Of a DNA stretch of 64,000 nt, positions 9,176 through 16,070 are shown in pieces. Positions within the stretch are counted from its first letter, which is position 1. Each line of letters starts with the position of its first letter. The notes beneath the pieces were generated by a model. The model ran no database searches, was not told the origin of the DNA, and saw only the letters and a list, made by a program, of their open reading frames with translations. The DNA is taken from assembly GCA_000708835.1 (NCBI GenBank), contig DF236965.1, positions 186,001 through 250,000 of the forward strand, given 5' to 3'. The position numbers were made by a program, and so were the translations under genes. Source of the stretch: Klebsormidium nitens (Eukaryota > Plantae > Klebsormidiophyceae).

Positions 9176-9495
9176 CAAATTTGGTGGCGACGTTTGGTTA
9201 ACTCTCAAAGCCGAAACTACAAGCTTCTCACCCCAACCTAGTTTCCAGCGGTTCCTTCTTTTGCGTTCTCCATCTATCTCTTCTCGTCTCGAGCATGCCA
9301 ATGCAGGGCGTTCTAAAAGCTTGCCCGGCATGAAGCTTTGTGCATGATGCCAGCTCGGAACTCGCTTGAGGCATCTATTGCTCGAGCAGGATCGCTTGGA
9401 CGCTTTGCACAGCTTATTGATATAGATTTAGCTGCGTCTTGAACGACGTCCTCTCATATATCCAGATTGGTGGTCGAAGCTTGGACGTCAGCAAC

Positions 9496-12400
9496 ATGGG
9501 TGGCGGCGACAAATGTACTCCTTCATCTGAAGATGATGCTCACGACGTCAATGGAGGACATGAGAAGCAGCAGGGGAGCAAAGAAGCCGAAGAGGTACAT
9601 TGTCCTGCAGGAAATTGACTCTGGTTCTTGTGCATTTTCTTTAGTTTTGGGACTTGTGCTTTGATGCAATGCCACATCACGGCCTGAAAGTGCCATGCAT
9701 ACAATTCAATGTCTGCTGAACTTGATCGTGCAATGCTGTCAATGCACAGTTCAGTGTAACAAGTGGGGAGAAATAAGTGGTCGATGCTTGAATCTTGCTA
9801 AAACGCCAATGATGCTGTTCAGTCAAAACAGGCAATCATGCCAACTTTTGATCAAGCAAGGAGCAAGAGCCTTTTGCGATTGAGCAACCGCTAGGAAACT
9901 TGAGAGCGGGTGGTGTTATTCGAAATGAGAACATCGAAATGAAACAACTGAACCTTGGAGCGGAAAACTCTCTCTCAGACTCGCTTCCACGTGCTCCCTC
10001 TGCAGCTCAAGAACCAGGGGAATGAGCTGTATCAAGCTGGGAGGGTCAAAGATGCACTATCCAAATTTGACGAGGCCGTCTCAAAGTCCCCCGATGTGGC
10101 TGTCTACCGAGCCAACAAAGCAGCAGCTCTGTCCAGCCTGGGCAGGCTGGGGGAGGCAATGCTGGAAAGCAAGGTGGGCCTGCTTAACGACTTCGGCGGC
10201 GGGAACGTTCTGAAGAGGCGTCTTTCATGGATATATCATTCATCTGAGCTTGGAAAGATTGCCTTTGTGCTCAATTGAGTGTGTAGCGTCACCCACATGG
10301 ATTTTGACCATTGATGTCATTCTTGCTTGGCTTAAGGCCTTCTCTAAGTTCCAAATCTATAAGACCTGGAATTTGTAGCGCATCTTTAGAGTGCATGTGT
10401 TTAGCGATTCTGTGGAGGCCTTTGTCTAGTGTCCAAGGCAAGCTTTTTGGTTGAGCCTTTTGACACAAGATACCTCAGAAGAAGAAGGCCATCTTGTTGC
10501 TTCTCAATACACTTCACATAAACTGATTGCATATGCATGACAACCAAAACAAAGCTTCTGTCTGCTGCAGAAAGCAGTAGAGCTAGACGACAACTATGCA
10601 CGAGCCCATGAACGGCTGGCAAACCTGTGCCTGAGGCTTGGAAGGTTCAAGGAGGCGAAGAAACACTTCGAAAAGGCTGGCGAGGGAGGAAAGGATGGTC
10701 AAAAGCGGGCTGACCAGGTGAGGGATGTCAAACCTGGTGTGCCTCAATCAGGCTGCTAGTACGTATGAATGGGTGTGAGAGCGGGAATGAATCAGATGTG
10801 CATGAGACGGACTTAGCTTAACCTTGAGGCGTTGATCTTGTTTTGTTTCGAAGGCTGAGGTGTCTGCTAAACACGGGGCACCTTGGGCAAGCAATAGAGC
10901 TGGACCTGCATACCGCAAATTCAGTCAAGGGTCGATCCGAGGAGAATCTTTCTCGATTACACCAGTCAACTTCTCCTAGATCAATATAGAATCATTGTCA
11001 AGGATTAATGAACATAGAGCAGAGGTCAGTGCAATTCTTGCACCTAAAGCTCTTGTATGTGACTGGAAGACAGACGAGAGGCTTCAGGGGTAAGTCGTAT
11101 TGACTCTCTAGTTCGCCCTTTGTTCCGCAGACTAGATGTTATCTATAGCTAGAGCATCTTCGCTCGGACCAGTCGCTACCCTCTTGGAACTCCCAATCTC
11201 ATGGCACTACATCGTTATGTCATTACCATTTTCCATCAGCTCACTGCAAATCCGGTCAAACCTGGCCGCCTGACCTGAGTCCGGTTTGAGCCTGTCGCAA
11301 AACTGTACCCAATGCGCACAATCCGGACCCTTTGATGTCCTGGATGCTAAGGAACGGACGGCCGAAGTTCTGCATCTTTGGCCGGGATTTTGCAAAAACA
11401 TCAACATAGTGATTGGGTCAGGCCAGGTTTGACCAAACTCGCAGTATCATCGGATCAACAGCCGCCCTCTGTCTCCAGCTGGATCAGCACGCCAAGGCCG
11501 CCTTGTGTGCGCGTGACAAGGGTGAGTGGGAGAAGGCACTGCGAGAAGCGGACGCCACAATTCAGGGGGGCGCCGACGCTGACTGCACCCTGCTGGGAGT
11601 GAAGGCAGAGGCACTCCAGAATCTGGGCCGGAGCGACGAAGCGGAGAAGGCGCGTGCGCAAGCGGAGAAAGCGGCAGCGGATGCAGGGACACCGGCCATC
11701 AGGGTGAGCAACGGACAAGGAGGGTCTGCTGTAGGCCTGTGTAAGTTTGTCTAATGGGGAACCCTTCTCTGAAAATTTCGATGTCGGTGGAAAATGTGGG
11801 GGAGTTTGCCTCGTAGTCCGGGTTTGCCGGCTTTCGTATGGAGAGATTTGCTTCCTTGTACGAGGAAGGAGACGAGATGTTGGTGAGCTGGCCTGGTTAG
11901 ACTTCAGCCCCCACCGTCTGCACTTTCCTTTTTCAAAGTGCTATTGCTTATGCTGGTGCTCGGCGATGACGCAAACGGCTCCGGTCAATTAATGACGCCT
12001 TCTGTGCTGGATAGCTGTGAGCCGTGGTAATGACACGGTTGTCCTCGTCTGTATGCTGTCTTCATCTTTATCTTCGGCGTCGCAACGATTCAATAGATGC
12101 CCCATGGGCCCCACGCTTCTCTTCCCTTCAGCAGAAGACGTTTGCTTCAAGTTTTTAAGAACGAGCCCCTCAAAAGAGTCTCCCGTGTTCCCTCTCGTCA
12201 GGATCCGGTCATCTCCATGCTGCGCGCGAAGATCGCCGCCTCGACGGGCAACTTCGACGGCGCCGTCGCGGCCGCCGAGCGCGCCGTGAAGCTCGACCCC
12301 GACAACTGCGCCGCCATCCAAACCTTAAAGCAGGTGCGCGCGCTGGCAAACGCGCGCACCCGCGGGAACGACCTGTTCAAGGCGGGCGACTTCGGGGGGG

Positions 12401-14371
12401 CCGAGAAGGCGTACTCGGAGGGCCTGGAAACCCCCCTGGGAAAGGAGAACGCGTTCCTGCTGTCGAACCGGGCGGCCGCGCGGTCGAAGCAGGGCCACTG
12501 GGAGGAGGCGCTCGCGGACGCGGACAAAGCTACGCGCGCATATCCGAACTACAGGTGGGGTGCCTGTGTGCGGTGTAGCGAGTGACATCCTAGGCGTCGA
12601 AAAATGTTGCAAGCAGTGGCTGCCCCGCTTCGACACAACGTATTCAAGCGTCCCTCTCGAAATGTTTCACCCACGAACTTTCAGGGAGTTAGGTGAGAGT
12701 ATCGCGGAGGAGGGAGGATCTGCCGCTTTGGCTTCAACAACGGTCGCTGTTTGACGGAAAAGCTTCCCTTTTATTACCCGCCAGATTATGACAGTTCGTC
12801 TACGGTTCCAAGATTGTGGCCCTTCCTCTCCTGCAGCAAAGCGAAGCTGCGAAGGGCGCACGCGTACCGAAACTTAGGCAGGCACGAGGAGGCGGTGAGA
12901 GACCTGGAAGAACTAGCGGCGGCGGCACCGTATGACGCGGACCTGGGCCGGGAGCTGTGGGAGGCGAACCGCGAGCTGGCGCAGTCGCGGGGCGAAGACG
13001 TGTCGGGGTGGAAATTCACACCGCCGGGGGGCCTCGTGGATGTGACGAGCGATCAGCAGTACCGGGAGAGGGTGAATGGGCCCGGCCTGGTCGTGGGCTA
13101 CTTCACAGGTGGGCCGTCCTTCGCGATCCGTGTTTCTTCATGCCGACGTCATCTGGGCCTCTACGACAGGCGTATTAGGCTTCGATAGAGTCAGCTTCTA
13201 CCAAGGGGATCGGCGAAGCCGGCTAGAGCCTTGATTCGAGACGGTTTCGACATCAATGTCTTTGTGTATCGTCAGCTTTTTCAGGGAACCTGAGCAGTCA
13301 CAGAGAACATACGCTCACAAAAGCTGAGCGAGAAGAGCGGGATGTCAGAGGAAATACGCTTATAGAAACTGAGCCAGCAAAAAACTTAGCTTCTCGTCAG
13401 CGTTCCACCCGTTCCCAACTTGTACGTCACTGCTCACGAGTGACAACGCCCTCTCTCCGCCGTTCGTCCAGCCACGTGGTGCGGGCCGTGCCGTCAGATC
13501 GCCCCGGTGATTAAGAAGCTCCCGGAGAAGTACCCCGGGCTCTCCATCATGAAGGTGGACATCGACTCCCACCAGCAGCTGGCTGCGGCGGAGGGGGTGG
13601 CCTCCGTGCCCACGTTCAAAGTGTACAAGTGAGTCACGCTACTTACCAGCGCGTTCAAAGTGTACAAGTGAGTGACGCCACTCAGCAGCACATTCAAGAG
13701 TGTACACTTGAGCAACGCCAGTCAGCAGCACACTAACTGAAACTGCACAGGTGAATAACGCCAGTCAGCAGCACGTTCATATTGCACAGTCGAGTAAGGC
13801 CAGTCAGCAGTATGTTTCAAAGTGTACAAGTGAAAGCCGCCAATCAGCAGCACAGGCCTCTGGCGGTGCAGCCAAGCACACCAGTCCGCGGCATCTCAGA
13901 GGGCGGCCACAGTCGCGACTGCTGCTTGGGATGAGAGTCAACCTACGCAGTTCGTGGTCTTCGGCCAGGCCGTTGTTACAGAGGCAGCTTGCTGTTTGTG
14001 CATCCTGTGTAGAGAAGGTCTCCATGGAAGTGGCCCTGGAACCAGGGGCTGTCAGCGAAGGGGGGACATTTGTATGCAGATCAAGCGAACAACAGTCTCC
14101 AGGATACCTCTGGCTTTCGGCTTCTCCTCGAGGGTTTGGCCCTAAGTCTTGTCTAAGTCGCCTTTGCTCCGTCGAAAAGAAGACCTCTTCTAGAATCTGA
14201 TCCGCCGGCAAGACGACTCTGCTCTTTCGAAAAATTGTCTTTTGATATTGATCCGCCGGATACGTGTGATGCAGAAATGGGCGCAAAGTCAACGAGATCA
14301 CCGGCGCAAACGCCCCTCTCCTGGATCAGGTGATTAGTCAGAACCTTCAAGACATCCTTAAGAAGGTCTGA
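9496..14371 (+). CDS. TTL: TPR-repeat protein with C-terminal thioredoxin domain (TTL-like), 8 exons
   Basis: Exons 9496-9594, 10006-10173, 10571-10717, 11479-11703, 12202-12554, 12837-13108, 13472-13628 and 14275-14371, all GT-AG and phase-compatible. TPR motifs: LKNQGNELY...ANKAAALSSLGRLGEA and RGNDLFKAGDF...SNRAAARSKQGHWEEAL. C-terminal Trx: GYFTATWCGPCRQIAP...VDID...VASVPTFKVYKNGRKVNEITGAN. Confidence 0.88.
13614..13852 (+). repeat. Degenerate ~39-40 bp tandem repeat (about 6 units) starting at the TTL exon 7 donor
   Basis: Units include cgttcaaagtgtacaagtgagtcacgctacttaccagcg, cgttcaaagtgtacaagtgagtgacgccactcagcagca, cattcaagagtgtacacttgagcaacgccagtcagcagca and tgtttcaaagtgtacaagtgaaagccgccaatcagcagca. 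Confidence 0.85.
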
Positions 14372-16070
14372 CTCCGCCACATTTAGGAAGAGGAGCTGAG
14401 TACAGTTATTTGCGCGAGGGTTACCTTTCGTTATTGTGTCCCGAGCGATATTTACCGCCAGCCTGATTGATCAAAGGCTGGCAGAGGCGAGTAATCAGGG
14501 TCTCCCCAGAACTGGTTAGTTGTGAGCTAGGCGGCCGTAAGGCAGCTGTATGGCGGAGCGGCAAGCACTGAGGGCCAGTAGTGCCATAGTGCCAATTCGT
14601 GTACATAAGAAGCAAACAGCTTGGCGGCTCGATGGCTGCTCGGTGAATGGTGAAAAGGTACATGCATGATAGGTGATCTCTACTTCATCGATTCCGACGA
14701 TCTTATCATCAAAGATGCTCAGGGTTATGCAGATTGGAGAACAAAGTCGTGCGTCAGGCCGGATGATTCTGCCGCTATAACAAAACTTGACCTCGGAGAA
14801 TTTCAGACCTCAAAGGCCTTTCTAGCGCGAGTCTTCATGCACGGCATGCTTGCACATGACGGTCGAGTCCAGAATGGATAGCTAATCAAGTTGCAATGGT
14901 CAGCTTAGGAGCGCTACTATGGTACGTTCACGCATAAGTTTTTGCTGATCTTCGGTTCCATGGACACTGAAAATTAAGGATGCGTGATGTCATGATGCAC
15001 ATGCAAAAACGGACGCTATAAATTAGTCTCGAACTAGGTATATAATGCTGTGCACAACGTGCTACAGGTCCTTCGAGTATGCCTGGCCCTGCGGAAAAAT
15101 TCTTCACTAGCCGGCGCAGAAAGATAACCCGAAGTCACCACTTGACTATACAAGGCTTAATATGTTAAATCCCACTTCAGCGAATCCTTTAATTTGCGGA
15201 GCCGGCCGTTCTGCTGCTCAACGAGAGTCCCTGTACAGCTTAAGTACGGTATATAGCTAGCGAGTCCTTGACGGCCTCAACAGTAGTTTCTTCTCCTTAA
15301 TGCACCACTCAAGTGTGCATAATCTGCATAATGCATACCTACGCCAGCATGGAGCGGCCGCGTCGTCACGCTCGTCCTGCGCCGGGCATTGCCCTGATCG
15401 ATCGGCCTGGGGCCTTCGCTTCCATGATGAGTCAGCGAGCTAATACCTTCGACTGTCGTCCGCCATTGTTAAACATGCAATATTCCTGTAGGCTGAGGAT
15501 TCGAAAAGATACAACTCACGCATGGGTTCTAGCATCAAGGCACATGTCAAGGGCGCTTCAATGCGACGGCCACAGGCTTGTCGCGGAAGACGGTTAAATT
15601 GCAAGGTTCGGATTCATGGAGAGGGTTACGATCCACTTCTAGGTTGTTTCACGTAGCGGCCGCAAGTGCAGGCTGACGGCGGTGGGCCGTTACTATTTAC
15701 ACAATGAAGCCGCAATAGTTCATCTCCACATGCAGCCGCACCGATGCCGAACAGACACTGAGAGAAGAGTGGACATGGCAGCATTGAAGGCACAAGATCT
15801 CGAGCAGACGCACGTGAAAAGTGAGGATGGCAGAATCGAGATGTGGCGCGCGACTGAAGTCTATACACGTCCGTCGTTGCGAGCATGGCGGCGGGGGTTG
15901 ACATGCATTGAACAGGCGGACTTGGATGCTCGGGCACATTGAAGTTTACTCTTTGAGCGCTCATTCCGACAACGTGTTCGTAAGCAATCACCTTATTGCG
16001 TACAAATATCTACAGTTCTGCACAGCGAAGGGATGCTCGGTGCTTAGACTCTTCGAAGGCCTGAGGAGGA

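What the first reader, a model, noticed from the sequence alone, without database searches (positions are those of the whole stretch)
13472..14371. TTL-like TPR-thioredoxin with a canonical WCGPC active site
Seen in sequence: the splice ACA G|CC ACG TGG TGC GGG CCG TGC gives FTATWCGPCRQIAP (13477-13491), plus the cis-Pro motif VPTF. The N-terminus before the first TPR is only about 33 aa. Established: Arabidopsis TTL1-4 (Hsp90/70 co-chaperone scaffolds in brassinosteroid and stress signalling) were described as land-plant specific, with a Trx-like domain lacking the catalytic cysteines and with long disordered N-termini. Inference: this could be an ancestral, redox-active TTL that predates loss of the dithiol.
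Basis: partly seen in the sequence, partly recalled or inferred. Interest (0 to 1): 0.7.

Follow-up and report, generated by a model that had tools for sequence, protein, structure and literature searches.

The report
Algal TTL forerunner with live thioredoxin site
This streptophyte alga expresses a TPR-plus-thioredoxin protein that is the algal counterpart of the land-plant TTL stress scaffolds. It still has the intact WCGPC redox site and lacks the long floppy head, so TTLs probably began as a chaperone-docked reductase.

Summary
An eight-exon gene on the + strand (9496-14371) encodes 505 aa. It has a 33-aa N-terminus, two carboxylate-clamp-type TPR triads and a C-terminal thioredoxin. WCGPC lies at 13477-13491 and the cis-Pro motif VPTF at 13606-13617. 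Spliced contigs from four runs in four studies confirm all seven introns, including the exon 6/7 junction.

The reading is supported. Exons 2-7 are colinear with land-plant TTLs. The TPR tree puts the protein in a 100/100 TPR-Trx clade, separate from DNAJC7-like proteins and outside the monophyletic embryophyte TTLs. Its Trx domain groups with TTL Trx-like domains (95/92). Micromonas-type green algae, Closterium, Spirogloea and this alga all keep WCGPC and have N-termini of 2-139 aa. Bryophytes to ferns mostly have W-S-x-x-C, and the sampled flowering plants lack the Trp as well. Two Klebsormidium-like relatives keep the gene under purifying selection (dN/dS 0.11-0.16, with no amino-acid change in exon 7 of the closer relative).

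Caveats:
- Redox activity was not tested, and the buried Asp of classical thioredoxins is Tyr here.
- The gene shares no intron position with the Closterium, Marchantia or Selaginella genes.
- No TDX sequence could be fetched for comparison.
- Kesten et al. 2022 already showed Cys-retaining TPR+TRX proteins in chlorophytes, so novelty is modest.

The parts
9295..9495 (+). 5' UTR (approximate start), continuous with exon 1; in-frame TGA at 9418-9420
   Evidence: Spliced contigs begin a few bases upstream of 9300; sequence read.
9496..9594 (+). Exon 1: ATG plus a 33-aa acidic N-terminus, with no Pfam domain and no long disordered region
   Evidence: joint 9594|10006; weakly conserved (54%) in relative L004.
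10006..10173 (+). Exon 2: TPR1 and the start of TPR2 of the N-terminal clamp triad (K35, N39, N70)
   Evidence: Pfam TPR_2 E 7.6e-6; clamp columns; joint.
10571..10717 (+). Exon 3: TPR3 of the N-terminal triad (R100, R104)
   Evidence: Pfam TPR_2/TPR_1 E about 1e-6.
11479..11703 (+). Exon 4: helical middle region with weak TPR-like matches, colinear with the TTL middle region
   Evidence: weak TPR matches; 31-42% identity to the same region of full-length TTLs; joint.
12202..12554 (+). Exon 5: three TPR motifs, including the first two of the C-terminal clamp triad (R265, N269, N302)
   Evidence: Pfam TPR_2 E 1e-16 with 3 stretches; PDB matches to HOP/STI1, PP5 and SGT clamp TPRs; query of the whole-library search.
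12837..13108 (+). Exon 6: last TPR (K332, R336), capping helix, conserved linker and first strand of the Trx fold (ends ...GYFT)
   Evidence: joint 13108|13472.
13472..13628 (+). Exon 7: thioredoxin core with WCGPC (13477-13491) and cis-Pro VPTF (13606-13617)
   Evidence: PF00085 E 9.7e-15; PDB thioredoxins E down to 1.5e-15; dN = 0 against dS = 0.34 versus relative L007.
14275..14371 (+). Exon 8: C-terminal strand and helix of the Trx fold (ITGAN...), stop at 14369-14371
   Evidence: joint 13628|14275; conserved in L004 and L007.
14372..14796 (+). 3' UTR (approximate end)
   Evidence: Contigs of two runs end at 14786 and 14796.

Best explanation
The gene encodes a probably cytosolic, chaperone-docked thioredoxin that is the streptophyte-algal counterpart (a 'pre-TTL') of the land-plant TETRATRICOPEPTIDE THIOREDOXIN-LIKE family. 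Two TPR triads carry carboxylate-clamp-type residues, the kind that grips the EEVD tails of Hsp70 and Hsp90. A conserved linker joins them to a class-h-like thioredoxin whose WCGPC dithiol would reduce disulfides in chaperone-bound clients or partners. The dithiol would then be recycled, presumably by NADPH-thioredoxin reductase. Shown here: the gene model, its expression and splicing, the domain order, intact WCGPC and cis-Pro, the clamp residues, purifying selection, and placement with TTLs but outside the embryophyte crown. Inferred: chaperone binding, reductase activity, the electron donor, and cytosolic location (acidic N-terminus with no targeting-like sequence). On the embryophyte stem this protein type lost the attacking Cys (WCGPC to W-S-x-x-C) and gained a long disordered N-terminus. 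That change turned a reductase into the TTL scaffold.
For: All seven introns are confirmed in spliced contigs of 4 runs from 4 studies. Pfam finds TPRs in exons 2, 3, 5 and 6 and Thioredoxin in exon 7 at E 9.7e-15. A whole-library search with exon 5 gave Klebsormidium-like fragments first, then named TTLs of Adiantum, Selaginella ('TTL1'), Marchantia and Sphagnum at 40-50% identity; DNAJC7-like proteins scored lower. Exons 2-7 align colinearly with full-length TTLs. The clamp columns read KNNRR / RNNKR in the window, in every complete algal TPR-Trx row and every complete TTL row, with a conservative K-to-R at one N-triad position in two rows and Thr in one. J-domain relatives read KNNKR / KNNKR or close variants. 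In the TPR tree the TPR-Trx clade has 100/100 support against J-domain proteins, and embryophyte TTLs are monophyletic at 99/97 with the window outside. In the full-length tree embryophytes have 100/100 and Mamiellophyceae 100/100, with the streptophyte algae between them. In the Trx-only tree the streptophyte TPR-Trx plus TTL Trx-like domains form a 95/92 clade, and the window is sister to the embryophyte domains at 96/81. The active-site column reads WCGPC in Micromonas-type, Klebsormidium, Closterium and Spirogloea proteins. It reads W-S-x-x-C in most bryophyte, lycophyte and fern rows (two Adiantum rows differ) and lacks both the Trp and the first Cys in the sampled flowering plants. N-termini are 2-139 aa in algae and 109-659 aa in embryophytes. 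Closterium (WCGPC) shares 4-5 of the 6 intron positions of the Marchantia and Selaginella TTL genes, two of them inside the Trx domain. Two relatives keep WCGPC; dN/dS is 0.11 and 0.16, and exon 7 has dN = 0 against dS = 0.34.
Against: No biochemical data exist. The residue equivalent to the buried Asp26 of E. coli thioredoxin is Tyr in the window and its relatives, and Ala in Closterium, which could slow or alter catalysis. None of the window gene's seven intron positions matches the six shared by Marchantia and Selaginella and mostly by Closterium. Strict orthology therefore needs complete intron turnover in this lineage. The order of the algal branches is unresolved. The Trx tree has only 102 columns, its bootstrap had not settled, and it includes no class-h thioredoxin or TDX. 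Hsp90/Hsp70 binding is only predicted even for Arabidopsis TTLs. The rest of this genome was not searched for a second, TTL-like paralogue.
Confidence: 0.72

Rival explanations
1. It is a member of the same ancient TPR-Trx family but a paralogue or a re-introned retrocopy, not the direct counterpart of the gene that became TTL. It would still be a chaperone-docked thioredoxin, but it would say less about the TTL ancestor than the Closterium gene does.
For: None of its 7 intron positions is shared with the Closterium, Marchantia or Selaginella genes, which share 4-6 positions with each other. Intron 5 is present or absent among Klebsormidium-like relatives. Its highest overall identity is to a Mamiellophyceae protein at 45-46%. 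The branch order of the algal lineages is unresolved.
Against: Among the hits that could be named, none was a second streptophyte-algal lineage of this family. The topology agrees with the species tree. The Trx tree puts the window next to the embryophyte domains. The introns show no similarity to each other or to the rest of the window that would suggest a recent burst of gain.
Confidence: 0.18
2. Despite WCGPC, the domain is mainly a redox-insensitive scaffold or holdase, as in TTLs, and the TPRs serve as a general protein-interaction platform.
For: The buried acidic residue is replaced by Tyr. In AtTDX the chaperone function does not need the Cys residues. TTLs work without the dithiol.
Against: WCGPC, the cis-Pro and the surrounding exon are the most conserved part of the gene in two relatives: dN = 0 in exon 7 versus L007, and 90% identity versus L004 where other exons are 54-80%. 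WCGPC persists across chlorophytes and three streptophyte algal lineages.
Confidence: 0.07
3. It belongs to the TDX (HIP-like TPR plus thioredoxin) family, not the TTL lineage.
For: TDX also joins TPRs to a WCGPC thioredoxin and has reductase and chaperone activities.
Against: TDX has three TPRs and is about 35 kDa in rice. This protein has two triads plus a middle region that are colinear with TTL and DNAJC7-type arrays. Pfam finds no Hip-type N-terminal domain. Its best relatives by the TPR part are named TTLs.
Confidence: 0.03

Closest known systems
Land-plant TTL proteins (Arabidopsis TTL1-4; Marchantia, Selaginella and fern homologues)
   Same: Same order of two TPR triads, middle region, conserved linker and C-terminal Trx fold. 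Same clamp signature KNNRR / RNNKR. Same clade in the TPR tree and grouped Trx domains. The cis-Pro VPTF is kept in most sampled TTLs.
   Different: WCGPC is intact here, whereas TTLs lack the first Cys. The N-terminus is 33 aa, against 109-659 aa in embryophytes. The gene lies outside the embryophyte clade and shares no intron position with TTL genes.
Algal TPR+TRX proteins with conserved Cys (chlorophyte proteins in Kesten et al. 2022, fig. S7; here Micromonas pusilla XP_003062458.1, Closterium CAI6009523.1 and Spirogloea SM000042S15360)
   Same: Short N-terminus, clamp-type TPRs, WCGPC thioredoxin, and the same clade. This is the kind the window protein belongs to.
   Different: The Mamiellophyceae proteins are shorter (about 366-405 aa). 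Closterium has TTL-type intron positions that the window gene lacks. The window has Tyr at the buried-Asp position, where Micromonas-type and Spirogloea proteins have Asp.
TDX (tetratricopeptide domain-containing thioredoxin, AtTDX/OsTDX)
   Same: A working analogue: TPRs fused to a WCGPC thioredoxin, with disulfide reductase and chaperone functions.
   Different: TDX has three TPRs of the HIP type and is much smaller. The TPR array here is the six-plus TTL/DNAJC7 type. No sequence comparison with TDX was possible.
DNAJC7 (TPR2)-type co-chaperones
   Same: Sister group of the TPR array, with two clamp triads in the same order. JGI's automatic name for the Klebsormidium-like fragment is 'DnaJ family protein C protein 7'.
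   Different: They end in a J domain with HPD rather than a thioredoxin, and their clamp signature is KNNKR / KNNKR.
Bacterial CnoX/YbbN chaperedoxins
   Same: A Trx domain fused to TPRs, linking redox and chaperone work (abstracts listed).
   Different: The domain order is reversed (Trx first; recalled from memory, not checked here). E. coli YbbN has SQHC and no oxidoreductase activity. It was not aligned or included in any tree here.

Membership tests
TTL (TETRATRICOPEPTIDE THIOREDOXIN-LIKE), as defined in the plant literature | TPR motifs at fixed positions (two triads) followed by a C-terminal thioredoxin-fold domain | tested here: met
   Pfam per exon; exons 2-7 are colinear with named TTLs; linker and Trx align.
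TTL (TETRATRICOPEPTIDE THIOREDOXIN-LIKE), as defined in the plant literature | Trx-like domain lacks the essential catalytic Cys | tested here: not met
   WCGPC is intact at 13477-13491. All 14 embryophyte TTLs in the alignment lack the first Cys at that position. Definition taken.
TTL (TETRATRICOPEPTIDE THIOREDOXIN-LIKE), as defined in the plant literature | Long intrinsically disordered N-terminal region | tested here: not met
   33 aa lie before TPR1, bounded by an upstream in-frame stop and by transcript contigs. Embryophyte TTLs have 109-659 aa.
TTL (TETRATRICOPEPTIDE THIOREDOXIN-LIKE), as defined in the plant literature | Falls inside the embryophyte TTL clade | tested here: not met
   The embryophyte clade has 99/97 and 100/100 support and excludes the window.
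TTL (TETRATRICOPEPTIDE THIOREDOXIN-LIKE), as defined in the plant literature | Shared gene structure (conserved intron positions) | tested here: not met
   0 of 7 positions are shared with the Marchantia and Selaginella TTL genes, which share 6 of 6 with each other.
Wider TPR-Trx family (algal TPR+TRX plus TTL) | Monophyly of the TPR array against DNAJC7-like proteins, with the clamp signature KNNRR / RNNKR | tested here: met
   The clade has 100/100 support. The signature is the same in the window and all complete family rows apart from one variable first position, and differs in J-domain proteins.
Wider TPR-Trx family (algal TPR+TRX plus TTL) | Trx domain shares ancestry with the TTL Trx-like domain | tested here: met
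   Streptophyte TPR-Trx plus TTL Trx-like domains form a 95/92 clade over 102 columns. The Mamiellophyceae domains are unresolved, and no class-h thioredoxin or TDX was included.
Catalytically competent thioredoxin (PF00085) | WCGPC dithiol and cis-Pro loop | tested here: met
Catalytically competent thioredoxin (PF00085) | Buried Asp (E. coli Asp26) that assists the resolving Cys (established knowledge) | tested here: not met
   Tyr419 lies six residues before the first Cys. The same Tyr is present in relatives L004 and L007.
Catalytically competent thioredoxin (PF00085) | Disulfide reductase activity | not testable with these tools
   Needs an insulin or DTNB assay.
TDX | HIP-like N-terminal part with three TPRs, then a WCGPC thioredoxin (about 35 kDa in rice) | tested here: not met
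   The protein has two TPR triads plus a middle region, 505 aa, and no Hip-type domain in Pfam. No TDX sequence was available for a tree.
DNAJC7 | C-terminal J domain with HPD | tested here: not met
   The C-terminus is a thioredoxin. J-domain proteins form a separate 100/100 clade.
Carboxylate-clamp TPR co-chaperone | Clamp residues (K/R, N, N, K/R, R) in a three-TPR unit | tested here: met
   Both triads carry them. Positions were mapped by hand from the ranges of the HOP TPR1 match onto the known HOP clamp K8, N12, N43, K73, R77 (recalled from the literature).
Carboxylate-clamp TPR co-chaperone | Binding of Hsp70/Hsp90 EEVD tails | not testable with these tools
   Needs pull-down, ITC or fluorescence polarisation.

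The most novel reading that the evidence does not exclude
TTL scaffolds arose on the land-plant stem from a chaperone-docked, redox-active TPR-thioredoxin that green algae still use. Inactivation went in steps: WCGPC in chlorophytes, Klebsormidium and Zygnematophyceae; W-S-x-x-C in most bryophyte, lycophyte and fern copies; and loss of both Trp and first Cys in flowering plants. It coincided with the gain of the disordered, microtubule- and CESA-binding N-terminus. The Klebsormidium copy, which replaced all its introns, is a living example of the active ancestor and could be tested for whether redox chemistry on chaperone clients came before TTL scaffolding.
Probability: 0.5. Interest if true: 0.55.

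Novelty: new member of a known kind. Interest (0 to 1): 0.4.

Why it matters
TTLs act in brassinosteroid signalling, osmotic and salt tolerance, and protection of cellulose synthase. They are repeatedly described as land-plant specific, absent from algae, and carrying a dead thioredoxin of unknown purpose. That places both the loss of the attacking Cys and the gain of the disordered region on the embryophyte stem. It also gives an expressed algal protein in which the ancestral activities (reductase, chaperone docking) can be measured and swapped into ttl mutants. This refines a point that so far rests on a supplementary figure, and it does not overturn it.

Tried and rejected
1. The word search with Closterium P0034 was swamped by low-complexity words and returned only 13 hits, mostly Closterium copies.
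2. The word search with the Spirogloea protein, residues 100-389, returned almost only land-plant TTLs. It found neither this genome's own annotated protein nor further algae.
3. The word search scored on the Trx part of a marine TPR-Trx was meant to bring in TDX and this genome's protein. It found neither, so TDX could be excluded only by architecture.
4. The window's own full-length protein was never recovered as a referenced sequence. The spliced 505-aa model was therefore not sent to any search, family scan or fold tool. Those tools saw single exons by reference only, and the joined search and fold steps were left out. The joined model was built only inside local scripts for alignments, trees and dN/dS.
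5. The introner idea for the odd intron set was rejected. The introns resemble neither each other nor the rest of the window, apart from the minisatellite within intron 7.
6. I considered N-terminal myristoylation of MGGGDKC. I rejected it as unsupported because Lys sits where the usual motif wants a small residue (from memory of the motif, not tested).
7. The paper search for Klebsormidium together with TTL, thioredoxin and tetratricopeptide found nothing.
8. No structure prediction was run, because the Trx domain spans three exons and has no single reference.
Full report
**Observation**

Reading the window gives a + strand gene of eight exons, all with GT..AG introns:
- E1 9496-9594
- E2 10006-10173
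- E3 10571-10717
- E4 11479-11703
- E5 12202-12554
- E6 12837-13108
- E7 13472-13628
- E8 14275-14371

The coding sequence is 1518 nt, or 505 aa. WCGPC is 13477-13491, the cis-Pro motif VPTF is 13606-13617, and the stop is 14369-14371. Pfam, run exon by exon, finds TPR motifs in E2, E3, E5 (three stretches) and E6. It finds weak TPR-like matches in E4, nothing in E1 and E8, and Thioredoxin PF00085 in E7 at E 9.7e-15. Against the PDB, E7 matches thioredoxins and PDI-type domains down to E 1.5e-15, including plant and Chlamydomonas h-type thioredoxins. E5 matches clamp-type TPR domains of HOP/STI1, PP5, SGT and TOM70.

**Expression and splicing**

Twenty public runs hold part of the stretch. I laid four of them, from four studies and two organism labels, on 9300-14900. 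All four gave high-depth contigs without a single base difference. These contigs skip exactly the seven predicted introns, including 13108|13472 and 13628|14275. One contig of 2123 nt covers the message from 9306 to 14786. The contigs begin near 9295 and are continuous with exon 1. An in-frame TGA at 9418-9420 precedes the ATG, so the N-terminus before the first TPR is 33 aa. The runs are only guessed to be RNA, but spliced contigs can only come from mature message. Low-depth contigs over some introns are unspliced RNA or DNA.

**What it is related to**

The spliced model has no reference, so I searched it exon by exon. The joined search and fold steps were left out. The joined model was built only inside local scripts for alignment, trees and dN/dS.

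The whole-library HMMER search with E5 gave two short Klebsormidium-like fragments first (91% and 79% identity). After them came a long series of proteins of about 575-1130 aa matching at 40-50%. DNAJC7-like proteins with an HPD motif scored lower. Cluster look-ups named the long proteins as Adiantum, Ceratopteris, Diphasiastrum, Selaginella ('TPR repeat-containing thioredoxin TTL1'), Marchantia, Sphagnum and Welwitschia. Only two of the 150 hits carry WCGPC. They are from Closterium sp. NIES-65 and Spirogloea muscicola, both Zygnematophyceae. A word search with the Spirogloea protein returned almost only named land-plant TTL1, TTL3 and TTL4. A further WCGPC group of about 366-405 aa from marine samples includes Micromonas pusilla XP_003062458.1, so it is Mamiellophyceae.

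Exon-wise BLAST shows E2 to E7 aligning in order, one directly after another, with full-length TTLs. In one Adiantum protein, for example, the ranges are E2 510-563, E3 566-598, E4 616-678, E5 693-807, E6 809-895 and E7 903-948. No exon is missing, and the whole TPR-linker-Trx body is shared.

**Diagnostic columns**

In an alignment of 38 proteins the active site reads:
- WCGPC in the window, Closterium, Spirogloea and the Mamiellophyceae;
- W-S-x-(R/G)-C in Marchantia, Sphagnum, Selaginella and one Adiantum copy (the other two Adiantum copies read C-S-D-R-C and W-N-D-R-C);
- forms such as S-N-x-x-C in the sampled flowering plants, which lack both the Trp and the first Cys.

So every embryophyte copy sampled has lost the first, attacking Cys at that position, and most keep the second. 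The cis-Pro loop is kept in most rows.

The five clamp positions of the N-terminal triad read K-N-N-R-R, and those of the C-terminal triad read R-N-N-K-R. This holds in the window, in every complete algal TPR-Trx row and in every complete TTL row; the first N-triad position is Arg in two rows and Thr in one. The J-domain proteins read K-N-N-K-R for both triads, or close variants. This is a family signature shared with TTLs.

The residues before the first TPR number 2-139 in the algal proteins and 109-659 in embryophytes.

One departure from a classical thioredoxin stands out. The position of the buried Asp26 of E. coli thioredoxin is Tyr in the window (GYFTATWCGPC). It is Ala in Closterium and Asp in Spirogloea and the Mamiellophyceae.

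**Trees**

- TPR region only (351 columns), rooted on 11 J-domain proteins. All TPR-Trx proteins form one clade (100/100). Embryophyte TTLs are monophyletic (99/97). The window, Spirogloea, Closterium and the Mamiellophyceae form an unresolved base.
- TPR plus Trx (465 columns), rooted on the Mamiellophyceae. Embryophytes have 100/100 support, and the streptophyte algae sit between them and the root, unresolved. This agrees with the species tree.
- Trx domain only (102 columns), with 29 thioredoxin domains from other proteins as outgroup. Streptophyte TPR-Trx domains plus TTL Trx-like domains form a clade (95/92), and the window is sister to the embryophyte domains (96/81). The Mamiellophyceae domains are unresolved. 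This tree is short, its bootstrap had not settled, and it contains no class-h thioredoxin or TDX.

**Selection**

Two Klebsormidium-like relatives were fetched, one from a metagenome (L004) and one from a Logan assembly (L007). Both carry the same gene with WCGPC and the same GYFT. L004 holds all eight exons. L007 holds E4 to E8; its contig starts just upstream of E4. dN/dS is 0.16 against L004 and 0.11 against L007. Exon 7 is the best conserved part: 100% amino-acid identity with dS 0.34 against L007, and 90% against L004, where the other exons are 54-80%. Introns 5 and 6 do not align with those of L007, and intron 7 shares only a 24-25-nt stretch. The thioredoxin core is therefore under the strongest constraint, which argues for a working site.

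**Gene structure: an unexplained point**

I mapped exons of the Marchantia, Selaginella and Closterium genes onto their loci. Marchantia and Selaginella share all six intron positions. Closterium, which keeps WCGPC, shares four for certain and probably a fifth, two of them inside the Trx domain. This ties the Cys-retaining zygnematophyte gene firmly to TTLs.

The window gene shares none. Its introns lie at residue/phase 33/0, 89/0, 138/0, 213/0, 331/2, 422/1 and 474/2. The TTL set lies at 111/2, 175/0, 230/2, 343/0, 414/1 and 449/0. Relative L004 also lacks intron 5. Either this lineage replaced its introns completely, or the gene is a paralogue or a re-introned retrocopy. The introns do not look like a repeated inserted element.

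**How it most likely works**

By architecture it is a DNAJC7-type double clamp TPR array with a thioredoxin where DNAJC7 has its J domain. The clamp residues suggest docking on the EEVD tails of Hsp70 and Hsp90. The WCGPC domain would reduce disulfides of clients or partners held there, and a thioredoxin reductase would reset it. The closest studied working analogue is AtTDX, a TPR-thioredoxin with reductase, foldase and holdase activities, although its TPR part is of a different type. These steps are inferences.

**Comparison with what is known**

Papers describe TTLs as specific to land plants and absent from algae. They describe six TPRs, a disordered N-terminus and a Trx-like domain without the essential Cys. 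Kesten et al. 2022 searched Chlorophyta and 'charophytes' under taxid 3146. They found no protein with a disordered region plus TPRs plus a Cys-less Trx-like domain. They used four chlorophyte TPR+TRX proteins with conserved Cys as the nearest relatives, and got only Chara braunii hits for the charophytes. No paper in the library links Klebsormidium with TTL.

The kind of protein is therefore already on record for chlorophytes. New here are four things: the Klebsormidium member with transcript support; the evidence that Zygnematophyceae also keep WCGPC and short N-termini; the shared clamp signature and intron positions; and the stepwise series at the active site.

The organism name Klebsormidium nitens comes from earlier notes of this scan. 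I did not verify it, though the trees fit a streptophyte alga.

**Verdict**

Novelty is modest: a new member of a known kind.

Noticed in passing
window 13611-13854: A 39-nt minisatellite of about 6 copies at 73% match. It starts inside exon 7 and repeats the end of the exon together with the GT donor (TTCAAAGTGTACAA|GTGAGT). A second donor-like copy follows about 40 nt downstream. All four transcript sets use only the first donor at 13628|13629. Reading on past it meets a stop at once (AAG TGA).
   Followed up: partly
window 12555-12836 versus L004:6309-6313: Intron 5 is present in the window and in relative L007. It is absent in the more distant Klebsormidium-like relative L004, where exons 5 and 6 are contiguous. 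This is a recent intron gain or loss within this algal group.
   Followed up: partly
window gene versus L001, L002, L003: None of the window gene's seven intron positions is shared with the Closterium, Marchantia or Selaginella homologues, which share 4-6 positions among themselves. The cause is unknown.
   Followed up: partly
protein P0112 (Acrasis kona KAL0477152.1): A heterolobosean protein with an N-terminal WCGPC thioredoxin, then a DNAJC7-type TPR array and a J domain. This looks like a separate fusion of a thioredoxin to the same kind of TPR array.
   Followed up: no
window 9296-9350: Several upstream ATGs lie in the 5' UTR of the transcript, ahead of the in-frame stop at 9418-9420. They may be small upstream reading frames.
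   Followed up: no
window 10688-11003 and 13079-13445: Low-depth contigs (depth about 4-5, against about 80 for the spliced form) cover parts of introns 3 and 6 in some runs. They are unspliced precursor or DNA carry-over.
   Followed up: no
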